Assembly (NCBI GenBank): GCA_002269645.1
Contig: NIVC01000803.1
Coordinates: 124,001-188,000 of the forward strand
Direction of reading: 5' to 3'
Source of the DNA: Macrostomum lignano
Taxonomy: Eukaryota
Length of the DNA stretch: 64,000 bases
The notes beneath the pieces are model-generated. The model worked only from the letters and a program-made list of their open reading frames with translations, was not told the origin of the DNA and ran no database searches. Positions within the stretch are counted from its first letter, which is position 1, and every line of letters begins with the position of its first letter. The translations under genes were made by a program, and so were the position numbers. Positions 34,162 to 42,254 of this stretch are shown here, piece after piece.

Positions 34162-37100
34162 ATGAACATTGACGTAATCGGTCGTGTCCGGCCGTCTATC
34201 CGAAACGAGGGCCCCTGCACCCTGGCCATCGGCTCGGACAACCGGGTGTCATCTCGGCCGGGCGGCCAGTCATTCGTGTTCCAGCACCTGTACCAGCAAG
34301 GTTCCAGCAATTTAGACGTCTACAGTCGGCACGTGGAGCCGATGGTGGACATTTTCCTGGCTGGCTACAACGTCTGCTTCATGTGCTTCGGCGAGAGCGG
34401 CTCGGGCAAGAGCTTCACCTTGGCTGGCGATTCGTCTATGAAAAATGGCCTGGTGCCTCTGGTGCTGGCCTCTCTGTTTGCCAAGCTGGACCCAGGTGAG
34501 ATTGCTGAGTCACTGCTGAATCACTGCTGAATCACTGCTGAATCACTGCTGAGTCACTGCTGAGTCACTGCTGAGTCACTGCTGAGTCACTGCTGAGTCA
34601 CTGCCAATTCTTGGTGGCAACTCTTGATAAGCGATTTATGATGGGCGATTTTTATGGGCGATTTCTGATGGGTGATTTTTGATGGGTGACTTTTGATAGG
34701 CGATTTTTTATAGACGCTTCTTGGTGAGCGATTCTCAGTGAGAGATTCTCAGTGAGCGATTCTCAGTGAGCGATTCTCAGGGAGCGATTCTCAGTGAGCG
34801 ATTCTCAGTGAGCGATTCTCAGTGAGCGATTCTCAGTGAGCGATTCTCAGTGAGCGATTCTCAATGAGCGATACTCACTGAGCCATTCTAAATGAGCGAT
34901 TCTCAATGGTCAACTATTCTATCTGCAAATACCATATGCTTAAATATGTGCTCACCCAGTTCTCTGCTTACAAATATCTCTAACTTTGATTGGCATATTT
35001 ATCACATTCATGTAGCAATGCACTTTTAACTTTAATAGAATGCTACATCTATTTTTGACAACTGACTAACTTCATTAGTTAGCCCATGCATGCTATAATT
35101 GAAACTGAAAAACTAATTTGTCATTTTCAGCCGATATTCTTCCCGGACGCAGTGAGTAAAGCGATAATTGTCATTTCTATTTATAACACGGTGATGGCCA
35201 AAAATCTCTGATGGAAATCGCGTTTTCATTTTTTTTGGTTTACAATAATTTTCTGTCTGATGCGTACCAGCTGGAATGGCACTGCCAATGCGATTGCTAA
35301 TGCGCCACTGTTTCTTTCTGTGCCATCAATGCCCCACCTGCCATTGTGTTCCACTTTTCCTCTGCCTGTTAGGTTGCTGCTGTTTTTGTCTCAATTTTAT
35401 TCTATTTTATATAGTCTGTCCTTGTGTATATCTTCTGTCACCTTATCTACCTCATCTGTCTCCTTATCTACCTCAAGTGTCTCCTTATCTACCTCACCTG
35501 TCTCCTTATCTACCTTACCTGTCTCCTTATCTACCTCACCTGTCTCCTTATCTACCTCAAGTGTCTCCTTATCTACCTCACCTGTCTCCTTATCTACCTC
35601 ACCTGTCTCCTTATCTACCTCACCTGTCTCCTTATCTACCTCACGTGTCTCCTTATCTACCTCACCTGTCTCCTTATCAACCTCACCTGTCTCCTTATCT
35701 ACCTCACCTGTCTCCTTATCTACCTCACCTGTCTCCTTATCTACCTCACCTGTCTCCTTATCTACCTCACGTGTCTCCTTATGTACCTCACCTGTCTCCT
35801 TATCTACCTCACGTGTCTCCTTATCTACCTCACCTGTCTCCTTATCTACCTCACCTGTCTCCTTATCTACCTCACCTGTCTCCTTATCTACCTCACGTGT
35901 CTCCTTATCTACCTCACGTGTCTCCTTATCTACCTCACCTATCTCCTTATCTACCTCACCTGTCTCTTTATCTACTTCACAGTTCCCTTATCTACCTTTT
36001 CTATCTCCTTATTTCCCTCACCTGTCTTCTTAGCTACCTATTCTTCCCTCTTATCTACCTTATGTTTTCTTTCATCTGTAGCAAAATAATTGCGATAGAT
36101 AATCAAAGATTTCCTCAGTACAATACTCAGGCCTTAGTCAAGTCTTAATTACTGGCTAATAAGTCTCTTAGCACAAAAAAGGCAATTTCGAATCCTCCTT
36201 TGATAACCGCACTAATTATCCAGCGTAATATGCAGCCAATACCTACCTGGAGTAGCAGACAGAAAATTCCTCATCCTCATTATAGTCAGCGATAACCAGT
36301 CAGCTTTTTGTGTTGCAACAGACCTTTATGACAAGATAATCTGCCCTCCATGACACATTCAGTGCTGAAACGAATCATACTTCTGCCAGGTAAGGCACTG
36401 GACCTGTTAAAGGTAAATTGGATGTACTTTCAAGCACAGCGGATTCTTCCATCAGTTGAACTGTCTGTCCTTCAATATTTATAAACTGACTGTCTTTGTT
36501 TAAAAATTCACTTCAAATTTGTCAGTTAAAACCTTTCGCGTCTTTAGCGTTTGCGCCTACAGCATAATATTATGATTAATTAACTTTATGCTTCTATTTT
36601 GTGACACGATTTGTTTATGTATCCCAAATATTTATTAGGCAAATGGGAGACTGCTCGCATGCAAACATTGCATTGCAAGCATATAGCAAAATTAATTCAA
36701 CGGGATTGTTTCTCTGTACTTTTATATCATCATTTTTATGAGATACTGGGTTTTGCTCAGCGGAAATGAAGCATAAACCGCGGCAACTGACTGGGCTTAT
36801 GTCGCTTTTTATAAAAGTGAAGTAAATAGAACAGAGATCAATTCAAGATGAGCCAAAATCCTACGATTTTTATTTAGAGACCTAAAGGCGACAGTTTCCA
36901 GACCAAAAATAACAAAAAGGCAATTTTTTTGCATTATTTTTAGGGCAAAATTTATCCCTTTTGCTTTTATCGAATCAACAGGAGTTGCTTTCTCTAAAGT
37001 CCGTTAAGCCACAATCCCTTCCCGCAGTTCCTCAAGTCAAAATGAGCCACAATCATTTTCTTAGTCTACTGAGCTACAACCCCTCTCCAGTCAATTTAAG

Positions 37101-40100: not shown

Positions 40101-42254
40101 TATGCTGACCCACTCCTGACCCATTAGACACATTCTGACTCACTCCTGACCCATCTCAACCTTGCGCGCCAGATCCTGGAGCTGGAGAACCAGCTGCTGG
40201 AGGCCAGCATGCGAGCCGAGCAGTGGCACGCGGACGCCATGAAGCTGCGTCAAACCGAGGACGAGCGAAAACAGCTGGCTGACGAGTTCGTCAGAATCAA
40301 GGAGCAGCTGCTCACCCAGACCAGGGACTACGACGCCCTGGTAGCCAAGAACGAGGAGCTGAGCATGGAGCTGCTCAATCTGGTGAACACGAAGAACGAG
40401 CTGCTGAAGCAGCGGGACAACATGTCCCTGGCCGGCATGCGCGGCGCACAGCATGATCCGCAGGCTGAGATGCAGCGAATCAAAGCCATGATAGCCAAGA
40501 CTCCGGCCGAGATGGCAGCTGCTGCCGGCGGCGGCCGGGGCTCTTCAAGGAGGCAGCAGCTGCCGGCTGAGCGGCGGATGCTGCGGACTGGCGAGCTGGA
40601 CAGAGAGCTGGAAGGCCTCCGCGGCCAGTACGACAAAGACCAAGAGAAGCTGAGGGACAGAATGTGAGTGCGCACTTCAAGCGACATTGTCACACAACCG
40701 GCGAGAGGCATTGCTGCCCATTCCGCAGACTCCCCTGAGCAGGCACACAAGCGCGCGGATACGTACGCAGTCATACGCACAGGCACACACTCACACAGGA
40801 GTGTACAGCGGCCCTAACTTTATTTATCGATGACCCTACAGAATCTCCACAGACACAATGAACCTACAGAATCTCCCCAAACACAATGACCCTACAGAAT
40901 CTCCCCAGACACAATGACCCTACAGAATCTCTCCAGACACAATGACCTCCAACCGCCCCGCCTGCAGAAACTTCCTGTTAAAGGAGCTGCAAGACACCCG
41001 CCAGCTGGCCAAGAATCGCCTTCGCGAGATCTCCGAAGTCAAGGCGGCCCTCGTGACGGCCCGCAGCGACGCCCAGCAGATGCAACTGCAGTACAACCGC
41101 TGCCAGCACAAACTGAAAGACCTCCAAGAGGAGTACAAGTCCCGTCTGGGTCGCTACGTCCAGGACATCGCCGAGCATGAGGACAGCCGCGGTGGCGGCG
41201 GCGGCGACGGTGGCAGCCTGCGCGACTACGTGACTTCGATGCTGGCCGATCTGCGGCGGGCGCACAAGTCGCGCGAGGAGCAGCTGGCGGCGGCGGCGCA
41301 GGAATTCCGCGGCCGAATGATGGACACCGCCAGGGAGCACGAGAGGCTGCTGGTGGCGCACGAGAGCCTCAGACAGCGCGTGCTGGAGAGCGCGCCGGAT
41401 GTCGATCCCGGCCCGCCCATCGACCAGCTGCGCCTCACGGACGAAGAGCTGATCAGCGGCACCCAGTCGGAGCTGCTGCGCCTCACCGAGGAGCTGACCA
41501 GGGCGCGCAAGGAGGCTGCCAACCTGAAGCTGCGGCTGGGCGCCCGGCCGGACACGGGTGAGCGGCAGCGACTGGCCGACGGAGAGGCGCATGACTTCCA
41601 GGATCTGCGCCGACAGATCCGCGACTTCAACAACTCGGTGCAAGCCGAGCTGGAAACTGAGCGGGCCGGCCTCATCGCCAGAAACCAGGTGGGCGTTGGT
41701 AAATTAGTTGGTAAATTAGTTAGTTAGTTAGTTAGTTAGTTAGTTAGTTAGTTAGTTAGTTAGTTAGTTAGTTAGTTAGTTAGTTAGTTAGTTAGTTAGT
41801 TAGTTAGTTAGTTAGTTAGTTAGTTAGTTAGTTAGTTAGTTAGTTAGTTAGTTAGTTAGTTAGTTAGTGAGTTAGTGAGTTAGTCAGTCAGTCAGTCAGT
41901 CAGTCAGTCAGTCAGTCAGTCAGTCAGTCAGTCAGTCAGTCAGTCAGTCAGTCAGTCAGTCAGTCAGTCAGTCAGTCAGTCAGTCAGTCAGTCAGTCAGT
42001 CAGTCAGTCAGTCAGTCAGTCAGTCAGTCAGTCAGTCAGTCAGTCAGTCAGTCAGTCAGTCAGTCAGTCAGTCAGTCAGTCAGTCAGTCAGTCAGTCAGT
42101 CAGTCAGTCAGTCAGTCAGTCAGTCAGTCAGTCAGTCAGTCAGTCAGCTCAAACCGCTCACCTCTCGCAGGCCCTGGAGGAGCAGCTCCGAGAAGCCAGG
42201 CGGAAGCTGGAGAAGCAGCAGCGCAGGCCACGCGATTCGCAGCCGTTGGAGTAG
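34162..42254 (+). CDS. CCDC78: Divergent kinesin motor joined to a CCDC78/DUF4472-like coiled coil, about 894 aa; exons 34162-34495, 35131-35151, 37789-37973, 38043-38365, 39220-39745, 40173-40663, 40968-41688, 42171-42254
   Basis: Motor motifs IDVIGRVRP, GYNVCFMCFGESGSGKSFTL, VEIYQEKVRDL, FTLVDLPGSE, LTRLLQEELGGNCRT. CCDC78-like motifs STEEEKLKVGKALVELEIENNKL...ILELEN, and MLADLRRAHKSREEQLAAAAQ...HERLLVAH, ERAGLIAR...EEQL. All junctions are GT-AG and in phase (total 2685 nt). Confidence 0.8.
34508..34905. repeat. 11-bp (CACTGCTGA(A/G)T)n at 34508-34603 and 14-bp (GAGCGATTCTCAGT)n at 34725-34905, kinesin intron 1
   Basis: Directly visible. Confidence 0.9.
35445..36000. repeat. 21-bp minisatellite (TCTCCTTATCTACCTCACCTG)n
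   Basis: Directly visible; kinesin intron 2. Confidence 0.95.
37070..37553. repeat. 27-bp minisatellite (AATTTAAGCTACAACCCCTCCCCAGT(C/T))n
   Basis: About 18 units; kinesin intron 2. Confidence 0.95.
38415..39215. repeat. C-rich ~16-bp repeat (CACCCAACCCACCCGT)n filling a kinesin intron
   Basis: Runs up to the acceptor at 39219; explains the (HPT)-rich ORFs. Confidence 0.95.
39830..40155. repeat. 30-bp diverged minisatellite (TGCTGACCCACTCCTGACCCATTAGACACA)n
   Basis: Directly visible within intron 39746-40172. Confidence 0.85.
40705..40945. mobile_element. SINE family 2 fragment (40705-40830, minus) followed by a 28-bp tandem repeat (40830-40945)
   Basis: Near-identical to 3211-3320, then (TGACCCTACAGAATCTCCCCAGACACAA) x4. 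Confidence 0.8.
41716..42147. repeat. Compound microsatellite (TTAG)n then (TCAG)n in the last kinesin intron
   Basis: TTAG about 41716-41883 (with TGAG variants near its end), then TCAG 41884-42147. Confidence 0.97.

What the first reader, a model, noticed from the sequence alone, without database searches (positions are those of the whole stretch)
34162..42254. One gene encodes a kinesin motor domain joined to a CCDC78/DUF4472-like coiled-coil tail
Seen: eight phase-compatible exons give one ORF of about 894 aa. A single uninterrupted exon (39220-39745) holds both the end of the motor (LTRLLQEELGGNCRT) and the start of the DUF4472-like block (STEEEKLKVGKALVELEIENNKL), so this is not two mis-joined genes. 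Established: vertebrate CCDC78 has no motor domain and is a deuterosome/centriole-amplification factor in multiciliated cells. Inference: this could be a microtubule-binding form of the centriole-amplification machinery in an animal with a multiciliated epidermis, possibly the ancestral architecture. The domain pairing may already exist uncharacterised in databases.
Basis: partly seen in the sequence, partly recalled or inferred. Interest (0 to 1): 0.8.

Follow-up and report, generated by a model that had tools for sequence, protein, structure and literature searches.

The report
Flatworm CCDC78 with its ancestral kinesin head
This is the Macrostomum lignano copy of CCDC78, a cilium protein that in most ciliated eukaryotes, sharks included, still carries a kinesin-like head that bony vertebrates lost; the gene is real, but the domain pairing is already in databases and in the ciliary-tip literature.

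Summary
Eight GT-AG exons at 34162-42254 (+) give one 894-aa ORF with a Pfam Kinesin domain (E=1.7e-53) and DUF4472 (E=3.5e-21). Exon 39220-39745 carries both the end of the motor and the start of DUF4472.

The finding is not new. The window is Macrostomum lignano, and the same protein is in GenBank (BOX15_Mlig030815g3). The same architecture occurs in sharks, amphioxus, echinoderms, hemichordates, molluscs, annelids, acoels, cnidarians, choanoflagellates, chytrids, oomycetes, a labyrinthulid, Plasmodiophora, a glaucophyte and a green alga. RefSeq often names these proteins "CCDC78(-like)".

Two papers already describe a Tetrahymena kinesin with a CCDC78 domain at the ciliary tip. They also place vertebrate Ccdc78 at the extreme distal tip of 9+2 cilia, where it bundles microtubules.

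The motor-bearing form is therefore ancestral, and the tail-only form is derived in bony vertebrates.

One point adds to what is published. None of 88 family representatives keeps the canonical switch I (SSRSH) or switch II (DLAGSE) motifs, while the microtubule-binding and neck motifs are conserved. The head is probably a microtubule anchor with impaired ATPase.

Interest is low to moderate.

The parts
34162..34495 (+). Exon 1. It holds the start codon, the RxRP motif (RVRP, 34183-34194) and an intact P-loop GESGSGKS (34390-34413).
   Evidence: tblastn with orthologues hits 34162-34500. Motifs.
35131..35151 (+). Exon 2, a 21-nt microexon (ADILPGR) in a variable surface loop. It may be alternatively spliced, because skipping it keeps the frame.
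   Evidence: AG/GT flanks. Present in P0001 and absent from P0002. The loop has pLDDT below 50.
37789..37973 (+). Exon 3, motor core (beta4-beta5 region).
38043..38365 (+). Exon 4. It holds the switch I equivalent DQGLASNQSAVV (38112-38147), where SNQSA replaces SSRSH and the Arg is a Gln. It also holds switch II DLPGSE (38217-38234).
39220..39745 (+). Exon 5, the bridging exon. It holds the microtubule-binding alpha5/L12 motif (NY)NQSVLTRLLQEELGGN, the end of the motor, the neck motif NTFPILND, the first coiled coil and the start of DUF4472.
   Evidence: It is the strongest tblastn block (53% identity to P0003).
40173..40663 (+). Exon 6, the rest of DUF4472 and coiled coil.
40968..41688 (+). 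Exon 7, the CCDC78 tail coiled coil, including the conserved NRxQHKLKDLxEEYKSRLxxYVxDIAE block.
42171..42254 (+). Exon 8 and the stop codon. It begins with the conserved ALEEQL but lacks the conserved C-terminal QxYIDKHLxRYKQEIxRLRxLLG motif of other members.
34255..39331 (+). Genomic span of the Pfam Kinesin domain (aa 32-325).
   Evidence: Predicted kinesin fold with TM-score normalised to the target of up to 0.89 against solved motor domains.
39641..40373 (+). Genomic span of Pfam DUF4472 (aa 429-530), interrupted by intron 5.

Best explanation
This is the Macrostomum lignano orthologue of CCDC78 in its ancestral form: an N-terminal kinesin-like head, a neck, and a roughly 520-residue coiled-coil tail that corresponds residue for residue to the whole CCDC78 protein of bony vertebrates.

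Proposed mechanism:
- The coiled coil dimerises.
- The heads dock on the microtubule lattice or plus ends at the distal tip of 9+2 motile cilia, on the central pair or singlet region.
- The tail recruits partners such as the CCDC33/C2D1 orthologue and cross-links microtubules, which stabilises the tip and helps set cilium length.
- The head keeps nucleotide-binding elements (RxRP, P-loop) and microtubule-binding elements. In the worm, however, it lacks the switch I arginine, and family-wide it lacks the canonical switch motifs. It probably acts as a static or slowly cycling anchor, not a stepping motor.

Shown here: gene structure, domain content, orthology, phyletic distribution and motif states.
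Inferred: ciliary-tip localisation in the worm, impaired ATPase, dimerisation and partner binding.
For: Gene model and domains.

Identity and orthology:
- The model is identical to GenBank protein P0001 of M. lignano.
- The full-length tail is collinear with vertebrate CCDC78 (35 vertebrate CCDC78 hits cover 96-99% of the tail query).

Distribution:
- In a profile search of 1.84 billion representatives, 88 of the proteins analysed (the top 150 plus 3 reference sequences I added) carry both motor and tail.
- Pfam confirms Kinesin in 54 and DUF4472 in 49 of the 55 weakest of these.
- Pfam also confirms both domains in named taxa: shark, amphioxus, Nematostella, Salpingoeca, Cyanophora, Hondaea, Plasmodiophora, Pythium and a chytrid.
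- Every named taxon builds flagella or cilia (my own knowledge of these organisms).

Literature:
- Tetrahymena I7LVY1 is a kinesin with a CCDC78 domain. It is reduced at least 4-fold in cilia of the CEP104/FAP256 knockout and is proposed to bind central-pair microtubules in the cap.
- Vertebrate Ccdc78 sits at the extreme distal tip of multiciliated-cell cilia, binds Ccdc33, bundles microtubules in vitro and controls the length of 9+2 cilia.

Motifs:
- 0 of 88 family members have SSRSH or DLAGSE, against 38 and 39 of 40 generic kinesins in the same hit list.
- The P-loop Lys is kept in 63 of 75. Y..S.LT.LL.D.LGGN and the neck NFP..ND are strongly conserved.
- The worm has GESGSGKS, SNQSA and DLPGSE.

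Structure: the head is predicted with pLDDT of about 85-95 and the tail as long helices. The head superposes on solved kinesin motors.
Against: - There are no localisation, expression or biochemical data for the worm protein or for any metazoan motor-bearing member.
- Vertebrate Ccdc78 also marks deuterosomes, and its knockdown lowers basal-body number, so a basal-body role is not excluded.
- The P-loop, the switch II D..G.E, RxRP and a neck-linker-like motif are intact in the worm, so slow or unconventional ATP turnover is possible.
- Some protist members keep an Arg at the aligned switch I position and look nearly canonical, for example Cyanophora with GQTGSGKT / ERA / DCPGSE. 'Dead motor' therefore cannot be generalised to the whole family.
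- The worm lacks the C-terminal motif that is conserved from algae to vertebrates, so its tail function may differ.
Confidence: 0.6

Rival explanations
1. One reading: a microtubule-binding form of the centriole-amplification (deuterosome) machinery that acts at nascent basal bodies of the multiciliated epidermis.
For: Vertebrate Ccdc78 localises to deuterosomes, and its knockdown reduces basal-body number (Klos Dehring 2013 as cited; reproduced by Hong et al.). M. lignano has a multiciliated epidermis.
Against: - Flatworm basal bodies assemble near fibrous granules, unlike the deuterosomes of vertebrate multiciliated cells. Depleting the single planarian CEP63/Deup1 orthologue has no effect on ciliary locomotion (PMC4799839).
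- The family also occurs in unicellular flagellates that make one or two flagella and do not amplify centrioles: choanoflagellates, chytrids, oomycetes and algae. That these organisms do not amplify centrioles is my own knowledge.
- The Tetrahymena member was found in the ciliary proteome and depends on the tip protein CEP104.
Confidence: 0.15
2. It is an active plus-end-directed kinesin. It walks along axonemal microtubules and carries itself, and perhaps cargo, to the ciliary tip, using a non-canonical but working catalytic site.
For: - N-terminal motor, neck and coiled-coil layout typical of plus-end-directed kinesins.
- Intact P-loop, RxRP and switch II D..G.E in the worm.
- Conserved neck-linker-like NFP..ND motif.
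- Some protist members keep the switch I Arg.
Against: - In the worm, and in most of the animal sequences compared, the switch I Arg is replaced. By established kinesin enzymology this Arg pairs with the switch II Glu and is needed for microtubule-stimulated hydrolysis.
- SSRSH and DLAGSE are absent from all 88 members, and catalytic positions drift freely between lineages while microtubule-binding positions do not.
- Bony vertebrates reach the ciliary tip without any head.
Confidence: 0.2
3. It is an annotation or assembly chimera: a kinesin gene and a CCDC78 gene joined by mistake.
For: Gene models at this locus are error-prone. P0011 fuses the upstream PKA-RII gene to kinesin exon 1, and P0002 reads through the stop into sequence antisense to a cadherin exon.
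Against: - Exon 5 is one uninterrupted reading frame that holds parts of both domains.
- The same architecture, with a broadly similar spacing between the two domains, occurs in dozens of independent genomes.
- It also occurs in ORFs flagged 'complete' in EukProt records for Salpingoeca, which I take to be transcriptome-derived, and on a 2,937-nt contig that encodes the full 932-aa acoel-like protein.
Confidence: 0.02

Closest known systems
Tetrahymena thermophila I7LVY1 (kinesin with a CCDC78 domain; candidate ciliary cap-complex protein)
   Same: N-terminal kinesin domain followed by a CCDC78/DUF4472 coiled-coil region. It comes from an organism with many 9+2 motile cilia. It is the only motor-bearing member with any experimental data, namely that its level in cilia depends on CEP104/FAP256.
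   Different: I did not retrieve its sequence, so identity to the worm protein and its motif states were not compared directly. It is 1066 aa against 894 aa. Its evidence is proteomic, not localisation of a tagged protein as far as the texts I read show.
CCDC78 of bony vertebrates (human, Xenopus, bichir, reptiles; about 440-575 aa)
   Same: The worm tail is collinear with the whole protein: 36% identity over 532 columns, E=2e-85. It shares DUF4472 and the downstream conserved blocks. RefSeq names the invertebrate motor-bearing proteins 'CCDC78-like'.
   Different: The bony-vertebrate protein starts just after the neck and has no head at all, yet it still binds and bundles microtubules and reaches the ciliary tip. 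It keeps the C-terminal QDYVDKHLxRYKQEI motif that the worm lacks. It also has a deuterosome role that may be specific to vertebrates.
Shark CCDC78 (Chiloscyllium, Stegostoma, Hemiscyllium; 916 aa) and amphioxus 'CCDC78-like' (925 aa)
   Same: Same Kinesin plus DUF4472 architecture and a similar length. The shark motifs are GETNSGKS / DSQAT / DLPGAE, so it has the same Arg-to-Gln change at switch I as the worm.
   Different: Both keep the conserved C-terminal motif. Neither has been characterised experimentally.
Immotile or ATPase-poor kinesins used as microtubule anchors (KIF7/Costal2 of kinesin-4; KIF26A/B of kinesin-11). This is a functional analogy recalled from the literature and was not tested here.
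   Same: A kinesin head used for microtubule binding and not for transport. KIF7 organises the tip compartment of primary cilia (He et al. 2014, listed in the references shown).
   Different: No specific sequence relationship. The worm head is about equally distant (roughly 25% identity) from kinesin-8, -3, -12, -1 and -4 structures. The tails are unrelated.

Membership tests
Kinesin superfamily (motor-domain fold) | Sequence match to the kinesin motor-domain profile and the kinesin fold | tested here: met
   PF00225 E=1.7e-53, aa 32-325. 156 PDB kinesin sequences match with E up to 0.01, the best being Kip3 at 4.8e-29. The AlphaFold2 head matches solved motors with TM-score normalised to the target of up to 0.89.
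Kinesin superfamily (catalytically competent motor) | P-loop GxxxxGK[ST] and the RxRP adenine-binding motif | tested here: met
   GESGSGKS and RVRP are present.
Kinesin superfamily (catalytically competent motor) | Switch I NxxSSRSH, including the Arg that pairs with the switch II Glu | tested here: not met
   The worm has SNQSA at the aligned position, with Arg replaced by Gln. 0 of 88 family members have SSRSH, against 38 of 40 generic kinesins.
Kinesin superfamily (catalytically competent motor) | Switch II DLAGSE | tested here: inconclusive
   The worm has DLPGSE. The D..G.E skeleton is kept, with Ala replaced by Pro. 0 of 88 members have DLAGSE, and many have lost the Gly or the Glu.
Kinesin superfamily | Microtubule-stimulated ATPase and motility | not testable with these tools
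   This needs purified protein.
A named kinesin family (kinesin-1 to -14 and later additions) | Clear closest relationship of the motor domain to one family | tested here: inconclusive
   The best PDB matches are spread over kinesin-8, -3, -12, -1 and -4 at 22-27% identity with similar scores. No phylogeny against a curated kinesin set was run.
CCDC78 family (Pfam DUF4472 / PF14739) | DUF4472 profile match above the gathering score | tested here: met
   76.2 bits against a cut-off of 26.6, E=3.5e-21, covering profile positions 2-107 of 107.
CCDC78 family | Collinear homology to CCDC78 beyond DUF4472, over the whole tail | tested here: met
   Bichir CCDC78 residues 5-523 align with P0001 residues 376-881 (gene-model 370-875), E=2e-85. 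35 vertebrate CCDC78 hits cover 96-99% of the tail query.
CCDC78 family | Conserved C-terminal motif QxYIDKHLxRYKQEIxRLRxLLG | tested here: not met
   The motif is absent from exon 8, and no match was found anywhere in the window downstream. It is present from green alga to shark.
CCDC78 family | Localisation to ciliary tips and/or deuterosomes; binding to CCDC33 | not testable with these tools
   Known only for Xenopus, mouse and human proteins.

The most novel reading that the evidence does not exclude
The kinesin-like head of ancestral CCDC78 is a pseudo-motor: a nucleotide-binding head with impaired hydrolysis that locks the CCDC78/CCDC33 tip complex onto the plus ends of central-pair or singlet microtubules of 9+2 cilia. 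On this reading the family is an unrecognised, eukaryote-wide 'ciliary-tip kinesin' lineage. Its head was dispensable only in bony vertebrates and decayed independently in several protist lines and in a hemichordate paralogue. M. lignano supports transgenesis and RNAi and has an accessible multiciliated epidermis, so it would be a practical animal in which to ask what the head contributes.
Probability: 0.4. Interest if true: 0.5.

Novelty: already known. Interest (0 to 1): 0.3.

Why it matters
The gene itself is ordinary. It is a deposited M. lignano protein with an architecture that RefSeq already labels CCDC78-like in many animals and that two ciliary-tip papers mention for Tetrahymena.

Three by-products may interest cilia researchers:
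1. The motor-bearing form is the rule across flagellated eukaryotes and persists in cartilaginous fishes. The well-studied tail-only CCDC78 of human and Xenopus is therefore a derived state of bony vertebrates.
2. The head has non-canonical catalytic switches throughout the family but conserved microtubule-binding and neck elements. This points to an anchoring function, not a transport function.
3. A flatworm with transgenesis and an external ciliated epidermis could be used to test what the head does at ciliary tips.

Tried and rejected
- Missing C-terminal motif: I searched the whole window for QDYIDKHLVRYKQEIxRLR with permissive tblastn. Only noise came back.
- Third word-indexed homologue search: I used a 20-sequence head-plus-DUF4472 alignment to get names for protist members. 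It returned only the animal members already known plus generic kinesin heavy chains. I obtained names through cluster look-ups instead.
I reran it on the 55 weakest.
- Literature: a search for 'DUF4472' gave 0 papers. CCDC78 combined with flatworm terms gave nothing relevant. The published Legal et al. 2025 paper was not held. Its preprint names the central-pair tip proteins that could be modelled, and the kinesin is not among them.
- Upstream start: rejected, because there is an in-frame stop 17 codons upstream and the orthologue N-termini coincide.
- P0002's 973-aa C-terminal extension: rejected, because its extra 94 residues map to 43796-44077 on the + strand, antisense to a cadherin exon.
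- P0011's PKA-RII fusion: rejected as a merged model.
- Comparison with the second genomic copy L001 showed only a homologous locus with a longer upstream 27-mer array. I did not pursue it.

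
Full report
**What is in the sequence**

I read 33800-42600 and assembled the reading frame by hand. Eight exons on the + strand give a 2685-nt CDS of 894 codons plus TAG:
- 34162-34495
- 35131-35151
- 37789-37973
- 38043-38365
- 39220-39745
- 40173-40663
- 40968-41688
- 42171-42254

All seven introns are GT...AG and the phases fit. An in-frame stop lies 17 codons upstream of the ATG, and orthologues begin at the same MNI(D/E)V..R.RP. 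tblastn with orthologues from other phyla finds exons 1, 3, 4, 5, 6 and 7 without any splice reasoning.

Pfam scores Kinesin at aa 32-325 (E=1.7e-53) and DUF4472 at aa 429-530 (E=3.5e-21). Exon 5 encodes aa 289-463, so it contains the last part of the motor, the neck and the first 35 residues of DUF4472.

**Where it comes from, and whether it is already catalogued**

The translated model is 100% identical to a GenBank protein of Macrostomum lignano (BOX15_Mlig030815g3, P0001). A UniProt entry (P0002) is a different model of the same locus. P0001 sits on contig NIVC01003790.1 of assembly GCA_002269645.1, again followed by a cadherin gene on the opposite strand.

The two other models at the locus are faulty:
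- P0011 fuses the upstream PKA type II regulatory subunit gene (27304-32752) to kinesin exon 1.
- P0002 skips the microexon and the end of exon 7. It then runs past the stop into 43796-44077, which is antisense to a cadherin exon.

**The tail is CCDC78 along its whole length**

The C-terminal 518 residues retrieve vertebrate proteins named CCDC78 with E values down to 7e-81, and the hits cover 96-99% of the query. Bichir CCDC78 (575 aa) aligns from its residue 5 to residue 523 with P0001 residues 376-881, which are residues 370-875 of the 894-aa gene model. Identity is 36% and E=2e-85. The bony-vertebrate protein is therefore the worm protein minus head and neck.

There is one difference. The worm ends soon after ALEEQL and lacks the QxYIDKHLxRYKQEIxRLRxLLG motif, which is conserved from a green alga to sharks and bichir. 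I found no trace of it elsewhere in the window.

**How widespread the pairing is**

A profile of eleven full-length members was run against 1.84 billion representative proteins. I split the alignment into a head HMM and a tail HMM and applied both to the top 150 proteins plus 3 reference sequences that I added (green-alga P0012, turtle and bichir CCDC78), 153 in all. The result was 88 with both parts, 25 with tail only and 40 with head only; the head-only proteins are ordinary kinesins. Pfam run on the 55 weakest two-part proteins found Kinesin in 54 and DUF4472 in 49.

Cluster look-ups gave names, in addition to the taxa already named:
- Vertebrates and other deuterostomes: sharks (Chiloscyllium, Stegostoma, Hemiscyllium; named 'CCDC78', 916 aa), amphioxus, a crinoid, a starfish, a sea urchin, and the hemichordate Glandiceps.
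- Protostomes and acoels: a clam, gastropods, annelids and an acoel (the last three).
- Cnidarians: Nematostella and a jellyfish.
- Close relatives of animals and fungi: two choanoflagellates and chytrid fungi.
- Other eukaryotes: Pythium, Phytophthora, the labyrinthulid Hondaea, Plasmodiophora, the glaucophyte Cyanophora, and the green alga Myrmecia.

Pfam on nine of these named proteins shows both domains, with about 80-130 residues between them.

As far as I know, every named taxon makes flagella or cilia at some stage. The tail-only proteins I could name are bony vertebrates, plus one 550-aa Lottia model that may be incomplete. The simplest history is an old, cilium-linked two-domain protein whose head was lost on the stem of bony vertebrates, after the split from cartilaginous fishes.

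**What is already published**

- Legal et al. 2023 list Tetrahymena I7LVY1 as a predicted kinesin that 'also contains a CCDC78 domain'. It is reduced at least four-fold in cilia lacking CEP104/FAP256, and the authors suggest that it binds central-pair microtubules in the cap.
- Hong et al. 2025 show that Xenopus, mouse and human Ccdc78 mark the extreme distal tip of multiciliated-cell cilia as well as deuterosomes. [quoted passage not shown] They state that the Tetrahymena orthologue has a kinesin motor that vertebrate Ccdc78 lacks.

The domain pairing is thus known, although no animal motor-bearing member has been studied. Searches for DUF4472 and for CCDC78 in flatworms found nothing.

**The head is not a standard motor**

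I aligned ten members with five canonical kinesins and took a census over the 88 representatives.

| Element | Canonical kinesin | This family | M. lignano |
|---|---|---|---|
| Switch I | SSRSH in 38/40 generic kinesins | 0/88 | SNQSA |
| Switch II | DLAGSE in 39/40 generic kinesins | 0/88 | DLPGSE |
| P-loop | GxxxxGK[ST] | Gly kept in 72/75, Lys in 63/75 | GESGSGKS |
| Microtubule-binding alpha5/L12 | — | Y..S.LT.LL.D.LGGN, strongly conserved | present |
| Neck | — | NFP..ND, strongly conserved | NTFPILND |

At the aligned position of the switch I arginine, about half of the members, mostly protists, have Arg or Lys. Cyanophora looks almost canonical. Most of the animal sequences compared have lost it: the worm and the shark have Gln, although the starfish and Nematostella keep Arg. 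Some lines, such as oomycetes and a second hemichordate paralogue, have lost the P-loop as well.

By established kinesin enzymology, the switch I Arg to switch II Glu pair is needed for microtubule-stimulated hydrolysis, and mutants at these positions bind microtubules tightly. I therefore infer that selection acts on microtubule binding and not on ATP turnover, and that the worm head is an anchor with impaired ATPase. This is an inference from motifs only.

The AlphaFold2 model shows a confident kinesin-fold head (pLDDT about 85-95) and long helices for the tail. Foldseek places the head on solved motors of many families, with TM-score normalised to the target of up to 0.89. None is clearly closest, so I do not assign it to a numbered kinesin family.

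**Most likely function, and the rivals**

The property shared between ciliates and vertebrates is residence at the distal tip of 9+2 cilia. The family also tracks flagellated organisms, many of which never amplify centrioles. Flatworm multiciliated cells assemble basal bodies near fibrous granules and not on deuterosomes, and the planarian CEP63/Deup1 orthologue is dispensable for ciliary locomotion.

I therefore rank the readings as follows:
- Ciliary-tip microtubule anchor and bundler: 0.6.
- Active tip-directed motor: 0.2.
- Centriole-amplification factor: 0.15.
- Mis-joined gene model: effectively excluded by exon 5, by the many independent genomes, and by ORFs flagged 'complete' in EukProt records, which I take to be transcriptome-derived.

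**Verdict**

However, both the protein and its architecture are already in public databases, and the pairing is described in the ciliary-tip literature.

- the breadth of the architecture;
- its retention in sharks;
- the family-wide loss of canonical switch motifs.

Interest is 0.3.

Noticed in passing
window 34503-34905, 35435-36039, 37072-37554, 38420-39212, 39836-40154, 40830-40947, 41718-42147; also 33438-34076: Six of the gene's seven introns are largely filled by their own tandem array: 11- and 14-mers in intron 1; a 21-mer x29 and a 27-mer x18 in intron 2; a 16-mer x51; a 30-mer x11; a 28-mer x4; and (AGTT)n/(AGTC)n x107. The 69-nt intron 3 has none. A 27-mer x24 array ends 85 bp upstream of the ATG. 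In the second genomic copy (L001) the upstream 27-mer array is longer.
   Followed up: partly
window 27304-32752 (+): The upstream neighbour is a cAMP-dependent protein kinase type II regulatory subunit gene (RIIa plus cNMP-binding domains). UniProt entry P0011 wrongly fuses it to exon 1 of the kinesin-CCDC78 gene.
   Followed up: yes
window 43544-44032 (-), 45130-45783 (-), 47454-47699 (-): The downstream genes lie on the opposite strand: a cadherin-domain exon, then exons of a Cys-loop ligand-gated ion channel (ligand-binding and transmembrane domains). The C-terminal extension of P0002 (43796-44077, +) is antisense to the cadherin exon, so it is a model artefact.
   Followed up: yes
window 42171-42254: The M. 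lignano protein lacks the C-terminal motif QxYIDKHLxRYKQEIxRLRxLLG, which is conserved in this family from a green alga to sharks and bichir. Exon 8 diverges right after ALEEQL and stops. No alternative exon was found in the 22 kb downstream.
   Followed up: partly
window 35131-35151: A 21-nt microexon (ADILPGR) lies inside the motor domain. It is included in the GenBank model and skipped in the UniProt model, and both stay in frame. It may be an alternative exon in a disordered surface loop.
   Followed up: partly
related proteins P0179 (Ptychodera flava) and P0247 (Glandiceps talaboti): Hemichordates carry a second family member beside the standard one (P0005). Its head has lost the P-loop entirely (RTPKTSNI / NDARSSSS) and scores only 50 bits against Pfam Kinesin. 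It looks like an independent example of head decay.
   Followed up: partly
window 46008-47463 (-) and 47715-48611 (both strands): Long open reading frames here are produced by tandem repeats (units such as [23 protein letters not shown] and KVRLRMRS / [11 protein letters not shown]). They are probably intronic satellite sequence of the ion-channel gene and not coding sequence.
   Followed up: no
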